124,000 bases of DNA from Octopus vulgaris (taxonomy: Eukaryota): contig OX597819.1 in assembly GCA_951406725.2 (NCBI GenBank), forward strand, positions 93,392,001-93,516,000, read 5' to 3'. Below, one piece after another: positions 18,183 to 18,928 of the stretch. Within the stretch, counting starts at the first letter, position 1. Every line of letters starts with the position of its first letter. The notes under the pieces are model-generated. The model saw nothing but the letters and a program-made list of their open reading frames with translations, was not told the DNA's origin and did not search any database. A program made the translations under genes and the position numbers.

Positions 18183-18928
18183 ACCTTTGCATTTGATTTT
18201 TTAATGTCTCTACCCTCATACTTTCGTGAGTTGAGTTGAGCAAACACTATATGAGAGAGATTTTCTTTAAGTATTGGAGATAGTTTTAAAAAAGTTTTTT
18301 TTAGCTGCTATTTCTAATGAGTTCAGTATGCGGCAAAGTAATTTATTTTACTAAGCCCTTTTATATAATGTAATAATTTGAATTCGCCTTAAATGGTCCC
18401 TTTGTATACTGAATACTTGGTGAAATTGATTAATTAATTAATTTTACCCTCAATTGTTGAAATTATAATTCATCTCTCTCTATATAATGCCTCGGATTTT
18501 ACCGAAAAAAGCATAGTGTTTGCTGATTTTAACCCACGCTGGTGGAAAGGGGAGAGCAGAAATTCTTCGTTTGCATATTTGAATTTGCTAGCACTGTTAG
18601 TTTTGAGCAGATCTTCAGAAGCGATAACAGGCCGAAAGGGTATGCTCCCACTTTCAGTGTTTTCAAATCCAAACCAGGGAGTTCTGAGCTGATGATGGAA
18701 GTGTCGATTTTGACTAATCTTGAAACGTACGTTCTCAAATAACCTTTGCATTTGATTTTTTAATGTCTCTACCCTCATACTTTCGTGAGTTGAGTTGAGC
18801 AAACACTATATGAGAGAGATTTTCTTTAAGTATTGGAGATAGTTTTAAAAAAGTTTTTTTTAGCTGCTATTTCTAATGAGTTCAGTATGCGGCAAAGTAA
18901 TTTATTTTACTAAGCCCTTTTATATAAT
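18183..18928 (+). mobile_element. Hammerhead-containing partial tandem element (559-nt unit, 187-bp direct repeat) in (TA)n; Penelope pLTR- or non-LTR retrozyme-like
   Basis: 18183-18369 appears identical to 18742-18928; (TA)n on both flanks; HHR immediately before the second repeat. Confidence 0.7.
18685..18737 (+). ncRNA. Type I hammerhead ribozyme fold
   Basis: Stem I UGAG/CUCA; core CUGAUGA 18689-18695; imperfect stem II; GAAAC 18722-18726; palindromic stem III ACGUACGU; GUU site, cleavage after 18733. Confidence 0.75.

What the first reader, a model, noticed from the sequence alone, without database searches (positions are those of the whole stretch)
18183..18928. 559-nt hammerhead unit in a 1.33-copy tandem: candidate retrozyme or circRNA template
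Seen: an apparently identical 187-bp direct repeat with period 559, a canonical CUGAUGA...GAAAC core, and predicted cleavage after 18733. The left end of the insertion (18183) corresponds to unit position 18742, only about 8 nt downstream of the cleavage product 5' end. Both flanks are (TA)n and the unit has no meaningful ORF. Inference: the RNA template began at the ribozyme cut and RT read around a circle, or through an uncleaved second HHR. Identity of the repeats suggests a recent event. Caveat: stem II is imperfect (U.U closing pair, wobbles).
Basis: partly seen in the sequence, partly recalled or inferred. Interest (0 to 1): 0.85.

Follow-up and report, generated by a model that had tools for sequence, protein, structure and literature searches.

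The report
Hammerhead retrozyme insertion in TA microsatellite
This is one recent 1.33-unit copy of an abundant 559-nt non-coding retroelement that carries a hammerhead-type self-cleaving RNA motif and always lands in (TA)n repeats. It is a new example of the known animal "retrozyme"/Penelope-dependent class, not a new kind of element.

Summary
Window 18183-18741 is a 559-nt unit, followed by an identical 187-nt second start (18742-18928), with (TA)n on both sides.

It is one insertion of a young family. The genome holds at least 228 matches and 1429 exact copies of the ribozyme core.

In 32 loci and 53 arms, every 3' end abuts (TA)n at one of two fixed unit positions (about 187-197 or 283-285). 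The 5' ends are scattered. Twenty-one loci are head-to-head inverted pairs. This is the insertion signature described for Penelope-like elements (PLEs).

The hammerhead is credible. The core is canonical, no polymorphism lies in it, the distal stem of helix II covaries among subfamilies, and 0 of 5000 shuffles match a descriptor. Rfam models do not score it, and cleavage is untested.

All units and both arms of a locus share one haplotype, so one template variant made each insertion.

The window copy holds a single ribozyme, so it cannot itself release a unit-length RNA.

Verdict: a new member of the non-LTR retrozyme class. The pairing of the two 3' end classes in inverted insertions bears on the insertion mechanism.

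The parts
18166..18183 (.). Left (TA)9 target microsatellite, which is the tail of the upstream SINE. Base 18183 could belong to either the microsatellite or the element.
   Evidence: sequence. One search shows that other copies of the same SINE end in AAAAGAGTA(TA)n.
18183..18741 (+). First, complete 559-nt unit of the retrozyme-like element
   Evidence: It is 95-99% identical to at least 228 places in the genome. It differs from the family consensus at 3 positions.
18742..18928 (+). Second, partial unit (unit positions 1-187), identical to 18183-18369. It ends at the family's 'class B' 3' end site, TTTTATATAAT|(TA)n.
18929..18947 (.). Right (TA)n flank, followed by the head of a second SINE copy
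   Evidence: repeat D3: 17952-18040 matches 18968-19056 at 92%.
18670..18754 (+). Type I hammerhead-like motif, complete once in this locus. Components: helix I 5' strand 18670-18688; CUGAUGA 18689-18695; helix II 18696-18721; GAAA 18722-18725; helix III with palindromic ACGUACGU 18725-18732; predicted cut between 18733 and 18734; helix I 3' strand 18734-18754.
   Evidence: Core conserved in 1429 genomic copies. Helix II covariation. No common polymorphism in this block apart from one loop-II indel. Descriptor hits 0 of 5000 shuffles. No Rfam hit.
18364..18467 (+). Predicted hairpin (unit 182-285). Its basal stem strands UAUAAU (unit 182-187) and AUUAUA (unit 280-285) coincide with the family's two 3' end classes.
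   Evidence: fold (z=-2.2). for the end positions. The region has no common polymorphism.
17940..18165 (+). Upstream SINE copy whose (TA)n tail received the insertion. This is context, not part of the element, and the start coordinate is approximate.
   Evidence: (D3)

Best explanation
The locus is one insertion, 1.33 units long, of a young, high-copy, non-coding retroelement family with a 559-nt unit, of the animal non-LTR retrozyme kind.

The proposed mechanism has five steps:
1. The element RNA, in the sense that carries a type I hammerhead, is used as template for target-primed reverse transcription at a break in a (TA)n microsatellite.
2. The (TA)n DNA 3' end anneals to one of two UA-rich sites in the RNA (unit ~187-197 or ~283-285). 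These sites form the two strands at the base of a predicted hairpin.
3. Reverse transcriptase then copies a covalently continuous template of more than one unit, most simply a 559-nt circle read round and round, otherwise a homogeneous multimer. It stops at a variable point, which gives a 5'-truncated partial tandem.
4. In two thirds of insertions the other DNA end primes at the other site on the same template variant. The two cDNAs are then joined head to head.
5. The enzyme is most likely supplied by a (TA)n-targeting Penelope-like element (PLE). Such elements, with intact RT/GIY-YIG frames, are abundant in this genome.

The window copy used the 187 site, has no inverted arm, and happened to end 8 nt past the ribozyme cut. 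It carries one ribozyme, so it is an end product.

Shown here: the family, the insertion anatomy, the haplotype unity of each locus, and the conservation and covariation of the ribozyme. Inferred: the RNA intermediate, the circle, self-cleavage and the PLE partner.
For: **Family and dispersal.** At least 228 matches on 19 contigs, and 1429 exact ribozyme cores against 0 in the reversed-pattern control.

**Polarity, as expected for target-primed reverse transcription of the hammerhead-sense RNA.** Every arm 3' end that could be read abuts (TA)n. 49 of the 50 readable ends fall in two classes; 3 ends ran into assembly gaps or the locus edge. The 5' ends are scattered.

**Inverted pairs.** 21 of 31 loci are head-to-head pairs joined with 0-6 nt overlap or short filler. 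In 20 of 20 informative pairs, one arm ends at class A and the other at class B. Under independent choice this has P of about 1e-6.

**One template variant per locus.**
- Only 6 of 550 arm-by-site cells are mixed.
- The two arms of a pair differ at 1 of 308 sites, against 32.5% between loci.
- Unit junctions across the cut site are precise.

**RNA structure and the ribozyme.**
- The unit RNA is strongly structured: z=-6.2.
- The 35 common polymorphisms avoid the hammerhead block. Only a loop-II U-run indel lies in it. They also avoid unit 121-292.
- The distal stem of helix II covaries: 4 of 4 pairs show double changes, and 97% of cells are paired against 23-46% when the partner is slid.

**Candidate enzyme.** PLE copies with open 781-aa frames end at (TA)n.

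**Literature.**
- PLE insertions are 5'-truncated partial tandems with adjacent inverted copies, an extension at one end, and a (TA)n bias (PMC8557442).
- Animal retrozymes are AT-rich tandem repeats with type I hammerheads, proposed to be copied from circRNA (PMC7229834).
- Axolotl HHR_Amex2 also has a 2-bp helix III and a U.U at the base of helix II, yet cleaves.
Against: - No Rfam hammerhead model scores the motif, even at E<=10.
- G10.1-C11.1 is replaced by U.U (A.A in some subfamilies).
- Helix I is only 4 bp before an internal loop, and helix III only 2 bp.
- No covariation could be obtained for helices I and III.
- No RNA data exist here, so neither cleavage nor a circle has been seen.
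- No sequence similarity was found between the unit and the ten PLE loci examined. The partner is therefore only circumstantial.
- Only 32 loci were sampled, chosen as the best matches.
- Homogeneous arrays could also arise from homogeneous multimeric transcripts or from later DNA-level amplification.
Confidence: 0.75

Rival explanations
1. One reading: the template RNA of this copy was a ribozyme-cleaved molecule whose 5' end lay at the cut. The cDNA ran to (nearly) that end, so the left boundary at 18183 marks the cleavage product.
For: The window copy starts 8 nt after the predicted cut. One other arm (C3:139305377) starts exactly at CTCAAATA, the first base after the cut. Another starts 4-6 nt before it.
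Against: - Only 3 of 52 arm starts lie within 8 nt of the cut, about 1.6 expected, P=0.21.
- The other starts spread over the whole unit, with an excess at unit 380-476 instead (18 of 52, P=0.002).
- One of the three 'near' starts retains GUU|C uncut.
- A template beginning at the cut cannot give more than one unit unless a second ribozyme stayed uncut or the RNA was a circle. In that case the start has no special relation to the cut.
- The sequence AAATAACC next to the start offers TA-type microhomology for joining to (TA)n.
Confidence: 0.1
2. The template is a linear multimeric read-through transcript of an existing homogeneous genomic array, not a circular monomer. The hammerhead plays no part in making the template.
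For: Genomic arrays are internally homogeneous, so their transcripts would be too, and would give the same one-haplotype insertions and precise unit junctions. PLEs themselves form partial tandems without any need for circles (PMC8557442).
Against: - A multimer carries many copies of each priming site, yet paired arms never use the same class (20 of 20 A+B). This is simpler if the template presents one A and one B site, or if both ends are held at one hairpin.
- 23 of 53 arms have 0 or 1 ribozyme and are short, so long source arrays are a minority.
- Conservation of the ribozyme block argues that cleavage matters for propagation.
Confidence: 0.3
3. The hammerhead-like motif is an inactive relic or a structural RNA element of another function, such as an RT binding site. 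On this view the family is simply a PLE-dependent, SINE-like non-autonomous element.
For: No Rfam hit. There is a mismatch at 10.1/11.1, helices I and III are weak, and the local fold is no more stable than shuffles (z=+1.3). Naiad PLEs proliferate without canonical hammerheads (PMC8557442).
Against: - All core nucleotides are canonical and invariant in 1429 copies and across subfamilies whose helix II loops and stems differ.
- The palindromic helix III and the U.U base have active precedents (PMC7229834).
- Chance occurrence is below about 0.1% per unit.
Confidence: 0.2
4. DNA-level origin without an RNA intermediate: a satellite spread by segmental duplication, unequal crossing-over, or reintegration of extrachromosomal circular DNA.
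For: Tandem arrays of up to 8 or more units seen in one locus, assembly gaps next to some arrays, and homogeneous units within arrays.
Against: - The flanks beyond (TA)n are unrelated between loci.
- Every locus shows a strict polarity of fixed 3' ends and variable 5' ends relative to the ribozyme strand.
- Insertion is exclusively in (TA)n.
- Head-to-head pairs with microhomology junctions are typical of twin priming.
- None of this is expected from recombination of DNA.
Confidence: 0.05

Closest known systems
Metazoan non-LTR retrozymes (Cervera and de la Pena 2020, PMC7229834), including newt/axolotl satellite 2-type repeats
   Same: - AT-rich (34% GC), non-coding tandem repeats, from partial dimers to multimers.
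- One type I hammerhead per unit.
- A highly self-paired unit RNA.
- Sequence heterogeneity between copies.
- Helix III of 2 bp with a tetraloop and a U.U at the base of helix II, as in axolotl HHR_Amex2.
- Co-existence with PLEs.
   Different: - The unit is 559 nt, against the reported ~170-400 nt.
- Helix II is long (26 nt) with a 3x3 internal loop, and is not recognised by Rfam.
- Targeting of (TA)n is strict.
- Two fixed 3' end sites and frequent head-to-head pairs are documented here.
- Expression and circularity are untested.
Penelope-like elements and their non-autonomous derivatives (Craig et al. 2021, PMC8557442; Li et al. 2026 bioRxiv 10.64898/2026.07.22.740005)
   Same: - 5'-truncated partial tandems (pseudo-LTR-like).
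- An adjacent inverted 5'-truncated copy.
- An extra stretch at one end only.
- (TA)n insertion bias.
- A hammerhead near the repeated part.
   Different: - No RT/GIY-YIG ORF.
- No detected sequence similarity to the PLE copies examined in this genome.
- The one-sided 'extension' is about 95 nt (unit 188-285), not 30-40 bp.
- The (TA)n-targeting PLEs seen here showed no canonical hammerhead in the 1.5 kb inspected.
L1 twin priming (Ostertag and Kazazian 2001; from my own knowledge, not checked here)
   Same: Both DNA ends of the target prime on one RNA. The two cDNAs are joined by microhomology, giving an inverted, 5'-truncated structure.
   Different: Here the two priming sites are fixed and mutually exclusive, both arms can exceed one unit, and the target is a microsatellite.
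Plant LTR retrozymes (Cervera et al. 2016, PMC4918200)
   Same: Non-autonomous, hammerhead-bounded RNA of 600-1000 nt, proposed to circularise and serve as the RT template.
   Different: The plant elements have type III hammerheads in LTRs, a PBS and PPT, 4-bp TSDs and Gypsy-type mobilisation. None of these is present here.

Membership tests
Hammerhead ribozyme, type I | Conserved core CUGANGA ... GAAA with A15.1-U16.1 and a non-G at position 17 | tested here: met
   Window 18689-18733. The exact core, with GAAACGTACGTT, occurs 1429 times in the genome against 0 in the control.
Hammerhead ribozyme, type I | Three helices around the core, with helix I open and helices II and III closed | tested here: met
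   Helix I is UGAG/CUCA with an extension. Helix II is supported by covariation. Helix III is 2 bp with a GUAC loop. My descriptor hits 0 of 5000 shuffles. No covariation is available for helices I and III.
Hammerhead ribozyme, type I | Score at or above the gathering threshold of the Rfam model Hammerhead_1 (RF00163) or a related model | tested here: not met
   No hammerhead hit at E<=1 on 2.1 kb, at E<=10 on 101 nt, or at gathering on the whole window.
Hammerhead ribozyme, type I | G10.1-C11.1 pair closing helix II | tested here: not met
   It is U.U here and A.A in some subfamilies. An active precedent with U.U is axolotl HHR_Amex2 (PMC7229834).
Hammerhead ribozyme, type I | Site-specific self-cleavage | not testable with these tools
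   Needs in vitro transcription of monomer and dimer constructs.
Non-LTR retrozyme | Short AT-rich tandem repeats, from dimers to multimers, with one type I hammerhead per unit | tested here: met
   Arrays of 0.2 to more than 8 units seen within one locus. GC is 34%. The unit of 559 nt lies above the 150-450 bp range reported.
Non-LTR retrozyme | No coding capacity, LTR, PBS or PPT | tested here: met
   The only long frame is antisense (102-111 aa). It is frameshifted in propagating haplotypes and shows 9 synonymous against 14 non-synonymous changes. PBS and PPT were not specifically searched.
Non-LTR retrozyme | Highly self-paired unit RNA | tested here: met
   MFE -156.9 kcal/mol against -118.6 +/- 6.2 for shuffles, z=-6.2.
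Non-LTR retrozyme | Expressed as linear and circular unit-length RNA | not testable with these tools
PLE-mobilised non-autonomous element | 5'-truncated partial tandems, often with an adjacent inverted 5'-truncated copy | tested here: met
   53 arms in 32 loci. 21 loci are head-to-head pairs. The window copy is a single arm.
PLE-mobilised non-autonomous element | Insertion bias for microsatellites, (TA)n in the Naiad, Hydra and Neptune-type clades | tested here: met
   All 50 readable 3' junctions, and the 5' junctions of single arms, lie in (TA)n.
PLE-mobilised non-autonomous element | [quoted passage not shown] | tested here: inconclusive
   In 20 of 20 pairs, one arm carries unit 188-285 at its outer end and the other does not. 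The length is about 95 nt rather than 30-40 bp, so equivalence with the PLE tail is an inference.
PLE-mobilised non-autonomous element | Sequence similarity to an autonomous PLE at the 3' end or pseudo-LTR | tested here: not met
   BLAST of the unit against ten PLE loci found nothing in the intact family. There was one 69% match (unit 116-268) inside a degraded copy, L058. Only 1.5 kb on each side of the nuclease domain was seen, so the test is incomplete.
PLE-mobilised non-autonomous element | Co-resident autonomous PLE able to supply RT and endonuclease with the same target preference | tested here: met
   At least 148 GIY-YIG matches, many in open 781-aa frames. L057 encodes RT plus a CX4CxxC linker plus GIY-YIG, and ends TTTTTTACAAA|(TA)n. 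L055 and L058-L060 end in the same or a closely related motif shortly before (TA)n.

The most novel reading that the evidence does not exclude
The strict pairing of end classes may reveal the integration mechanism of this element, and perhaps of PLE-type elements generally. In 20 of 20 inverted insertions, one arm ends at unit ~285 and the other at ~187-197, and both arms carry the same haplotype.

The proposal is that the two 3' ends of a (TA)n break anneal to the two UA-rich strands at the base of one RNA hairpin (unit 182-285) on a single template molecule, most simply a monomeric circle. Both then run as rolling-circle reverse transcription before the cDNAs are joined head to head.

That would explain pseudo-LTRs, inverted copies and the one-sided 'tail' in one scheme. 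It would also be genomic evidence for a circular RNA template.
Probability: 0.25. Interest if true: 0.7.

Novelty: new member of a known kind. Interest (0 to 1): 0.5.

Why it matters
Animal retrozymes and the unusual insertion structures of Penelope-like elements are both known. How the cDNA is primed, and whether a circular RNA is really the template, remain inferences in the literature.

This family is young, abundant and homogeneous within each insertion, with sharply defined 3' ends and many two-armed insertions. Its genomic copies therefore record individual integration events almost unaltered.

It extends retrozymes to a larger unit (559 nt) and to a hammerhead variant that the current Rfam models miss. 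My two full-text searches returned no paper describing a retrozyme from an octopus; the host's identity as a cephalopod is only my guess. The family also offers a concrete, testable rule, one class A end plus one class B end per pair, for work on PLE-type target-primed reverse transcription.

For the window itself the result is ordinary: a dead-on-arrival copy inserted in the (TA)n tail of a SINE.

Tried and rejected
- **Rfam.** Scans of the region, of the 101-nt motif and of the whole window found no hammerhead.
- **Possible inverted mini-arm.** The palindrome AAAGGT(TA)nACCTTT at the left junction turned out to be the normal degenerate SINE tail.
- **Compensatory changes in the unit-wide fold.** There are none. 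The polymorphisms are one-sided transitions, about half of which preserve pairing.
- **Helix III covariation.** Non-C at position 15.2 occurs in only 36 copies, mostly C>U or C>A decay.
- **A loose pattern for the 3' half of the variant ribozymes.** It was non-specific and wasted a search.
- **A second batch of 20 loci.** The sample therefore stays at 32 loci. Later genome-search runs still returned a few loci, which I used only for the PLE check and for the second element.
- **Antisense ORF.** Tested and rejected.
- **PLE partner by sequence similarity.** Not found.
- **Organism.** It could not be named. The best homologue of the PLE protein is 60% identical, and the named relatives are bivalve proteins. 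From the SINE sequence I suspect a cephalopod, but that is recollection only.

Full report
**1. The observation**

The sequence is as described.
- Window 18183-18741 is a 559-nt unit. 18742-18928 repeats its first 187 nt without a single difference, after which the sequences diverge.
- Both flanks are (TA)n. The left one is the microsatellite tail of a SINE, and other copies of that SINE in the window end AAAAGAGTA(TA)n. A second copy of the SINE starts just right of the insertion.
- The hammerhead-like motif reads: CUGAUGA (18689-18695); a 26-nt helix II; GAAA (18722-18725); ACGUACGU, giving a 2-bp helix III closed by a palindromic GUAC loop; then U17 at 18733, followed by CUCA, which pairs with UGAG upstream of the core.
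- RNAfold extends helix I to about 18670/18754 through two internal loops.

**2. It is a member of a large, young family**

- A search of the window's own genome (2.8 Gb) with the unit gave at least 228 matches at 95-99% identity on 19 contigs. Many are head-to-tail, with arrays of more than eight units in a single locus.
- An exact pattern for the core plus helix III (CTGATGA N8-40 GAAACGTACGTT) has 1429 matches, against none for the reversed control.
- I obtained DNA for 32 loci.

**3. Anatomy of the insertions**

Chaining BLAST hits gave 53 arms in those loci.
- *3' ends.* Taken in the ribozyme sense, every arm 3' end that could be read abuts (TA)n. 49 of the 50 readable ends fall in two classes. 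Class A is ...GTTGAAATTATA|(TA)n, at unit about 283-285; BLAST reports it as 285 or 304 because it runs on into TA. Class B is ...CCCTTTTATATAAT|(TA)n or a few bases further, at unit 185-197, with rare ends at 164-168. Three ends could not be read because they ran into assembly gaps or the edge of the locus.
- *5' ends.* These are scattered over the unit.
- *Inverted pairs.* Twenty-one loci are head-to-head pairs, joined directly by 0-6 nt of overlap or a short filler. Ten loci, including the window's, are single arms whose 5' end also joins (TA)n.
- *Interpretation.* Fixed 3' ends, variable 5' truncation, partial tandems, adjacent inverted truncated copies and (TA)n targets are the features listed for Penelope-like elements by Craig et al. 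2021 (PMC8557442). They also fit the tandem, AT-rich, non-coding repeats with type I hammerheads called non-LTR retrozymes (PMC7229834). A 2026 preprint links retrozymes to PLE pseudo-LTRs.

**4. Is the hammerhead real?**

Against:
- No Rfam model scores it, even at E<=10 on 101 nt.
- The 10.1/11.1 pair is U.U.
- Helices I and III are short.
- The local fold is no better than shuffles.

For:
- My descriptor requires the core, at least 3 bp in helix II (one basal mismatch allowed), A15.1-U16.1 plus one further pair, H17, and at least 4 bp in helix I. It hits 0 of 5000 dinucleotide shuffles of the unit and only two places in the 124-kb window.
- Among 67 full units, the 35 common polymorphisms lie in unit 21-120 and 293-480. 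The ribozyme block (481-559 plus 1-22) has only a one-base length change in the U-run of loop II, where about 6 polymorphisms would be expected. Unit 121-292 has none.
- Subfamilies found by pattern search keep the core and the proximal AGA/UCU stem. They have different loops and different distal stems that still pair: GUC/GAC, GUCGAAU/AUUCGGC, GCUGA/UUGGC, AACC/GGUU, UCC/GGA.
- On an alignment of 16 variants, 97% of cells pair, against 23-46% when the partner is slid. All four distal pairs show double changes.
- A 2-bp helix III with a tetraloop and a U.U at the base of helix II are described for axolotl HHR_Amex2. That ribozyme cleaves weakly as a monomer and well as a dimer. The palindrome ACGUACGU would allow the same dimer.

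I rate a functional ribozyme at about 0.7-0.8. Helices I and III have no comparative support, and cleavage is untested.

**5. What templated the copies**

- Within an arm, 544 of 550 arm-by-site cells carry a single allele.
- The two arms of a pair differ at 1 of 308 shared polymorphic sites, whereas arms from different loci differ at 32.5%.
- Only homopolymer lengths vary within arrays.
- Unit-to-unit junctions across the cut site are exact.
- Each insertion, with all its units and both arms, therefore derives from one sequence variant on a covalently continuous template longer than a unit.
- The whole unit is strongly structured as RNA (z=-6.2).
- These facts fit rolling-circle copying of a monomeric circle, the model proposed for retrozymes. 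They fit a homogeneous multimeric transcript equally well, and I cannot separate the two from DNA alone.

**6.

- The left end of the window copy is 8 nt after the predicted cut. One other arm starts exactly at the first base after the cut, and one starts 4-6 nt before it.
- That makes 3 of 52 arm starts within 8 nt of the cut, where about 1.6 are expected (P=0.21).
- The only excess of starts is at unit 380-476 (18 of 52, P=0.002), inside a long predicted hairpin.
- The family therefore gives no support to a template that began at the cut.
- The 3' ends, which mark where reverse transcription began, are unrelated to the cut.
- The window copy contains one complete ribozyme only, so a transcript of this locus could be cut once but could not release a unit. 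It is a product, not a source. Of 53 arms, 23 have 0 or 1 core and 30 have 2 or more.

**7. The end-class rule**

- In all 20 informative inverted pairs, one arm ends in class A and the other in class B, never A+A or B+B. Single arms use either class (4 A, 6 B).
- Independent choice would give this with P of about 1e-6.
- The two sites are the 3' edges of the two strands, UAUAAU (unit 182-187) and AUUAUA (unit 280-285), that form the base of a predicted hairpin (z=-2.2). That hairpin lies in the polymorphism-free part of the unit.
- My reading is that the two (TA)n 3' ends of one break anneal to the two UA-rich strands at the base of one hairpin on one template, and both prime cDNA. The cDNAs are then joined head to head, as in L1 twin priming (this comparison is from my own knowledge).
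- The stretch 188-285, present at one outer end only, would correspond to the one-sided 'tail' of PLE insertions.
- This is inference. Two UA-rich stretches will pair with each other in any fold, so the hairpin coincidence is weaker evidence than the A+B rule itself.

**8. A possible mobiliser**

- A GIY-YIG search of the genome found at least 148 matches, many inside identical open 781-aa frames.
- One copy, L057, encodes an RT domain, a CX4CxxC linker and a GIY-YIG nuclease (Pfam RVT_1 and GIY-YIG). Its 3' UTR ends TTTTTTACAAA directly at (TA)n. L055 and L058-L060 end in the same or a closely related motif shortly before (TA)n.
- Its relatives in the protein database are RT/GIY-YIG proteins, the named ones from bivalves.
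- (TA)n-targeting PLEs with intact frames therefore co-reside with the family.
- The unit shows no similarity to these loci, and I saw no canonical hammerhead in the part of them I could read. The partnership is circumstantial.

**9. Other checks**

- The only long open frame in the unit is antisense (102-111 aa). Indels at unit 367 and 526 frameshift it; the 526 deletion haplotype was seen at three separate loci. The polymorphisms are 9 synonymous against 14 non-synonymous.
- No double compensatory changes were found in the unit-wide fold.
- The window unit differs from the consensus at 3 positions. One of them (unit 515, A>G) turns an A-U pair of helix II into G.U.

**10. Verdict**

The element is a new member of the non-LTR retrozyme / PLE-dependent class, and the window copy is an ordinary dead-on-arrival insertion. 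The link between the left end and the ribozyme cut is not supported. The part of wider interest is the family-level record of integration: one haplotype per event, two fixed priming sites, and strict A+B pairing.

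Noticed in passing
window 24268-24590 (+): A second, unrelated element of about 320 nt lies between two (TA)n runs. It has a more canonical hammerhead-like motif: CUGAAGA at 24397, G10.1-C11.1, GAAA at 24433, a 4-bp helix III, a predicted cut after 24448 and a 6-bp helix I. It belongs to another abundant family (at least 125 matches, often in inverted arrangements). Rfam does not score it either.
   Followed up: partly
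L057 (G000:C16:20837296-20840559) and L055, L056, L058-L060: A Penelope-like element family with many copies carrying an open 781-aa RT/CX4CxxC/GIY-YIG frame. Its 3' UTR of about 1.1 kb contains ~90-nt tandem repeats with a TGATGACGTC motif and ends TTTTTTACAAA at (TA)n. It looks recently active.
   Followed up: partly
family alignment, unit 21-120 and 293-480: Almost all common polymorphisms between insertions are transitions, many of them A/G, and they are confined to two segments of the unit. This may reflect RNA-level diversification of the templates (RT or polymerase error, or A-to-I editing of a highly paired RNA). Polarity could not be assigned.
   Followed up: no
53 arms in loci L001-L050: Arm 5' ends are enriched at unit 380-476 (18 of 52, P=0.002), inside the long predicted hairpin at unit ~376-505. 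This could reflect RT stalling or preferred cDNA joining there.
   Followed up: partly
window 17952-18040 and 18968-19056; SINE 3' motif at 13 places in the window: The insertion sits between two copies of a SINE whose tail is (AAAAGAGTA)n(TA)n. SINE tails may be a major source of (TA)n targets for these elements.
   Followed up: partly
L047 (G000:C4:155416500-155423500), both outer ends of the array: Runs of N directly abut both arms of an inverted array, at unit positions 85 and 400. These arrays appear to break the assembly.
   Followed up: no
L058 2505-2780: An inverted pair of fragments, 69-76% similar to unit 116-268, lies inside a degraded PLE copy. It is probably an older relative of the family.
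   Followed up: no
window 19352-19739 and 8175-8236: A 388-bp (TC)n microsatellite lies just right of the locus. The only Rfam hit at gathering score in the window is a tRNA-like stretch (31.2 bits), possibly a SINE head.
   Followed up: no
G000, one search list: Rfam Hammerhead_1 has 8 hits above threshold, and repeated 42-nt and ~105-nt near-threshold hits elsewhere in the genome. Further hammerhead-bearing repeat families therefore exist besides the two seen in the window.
   Followed up: no
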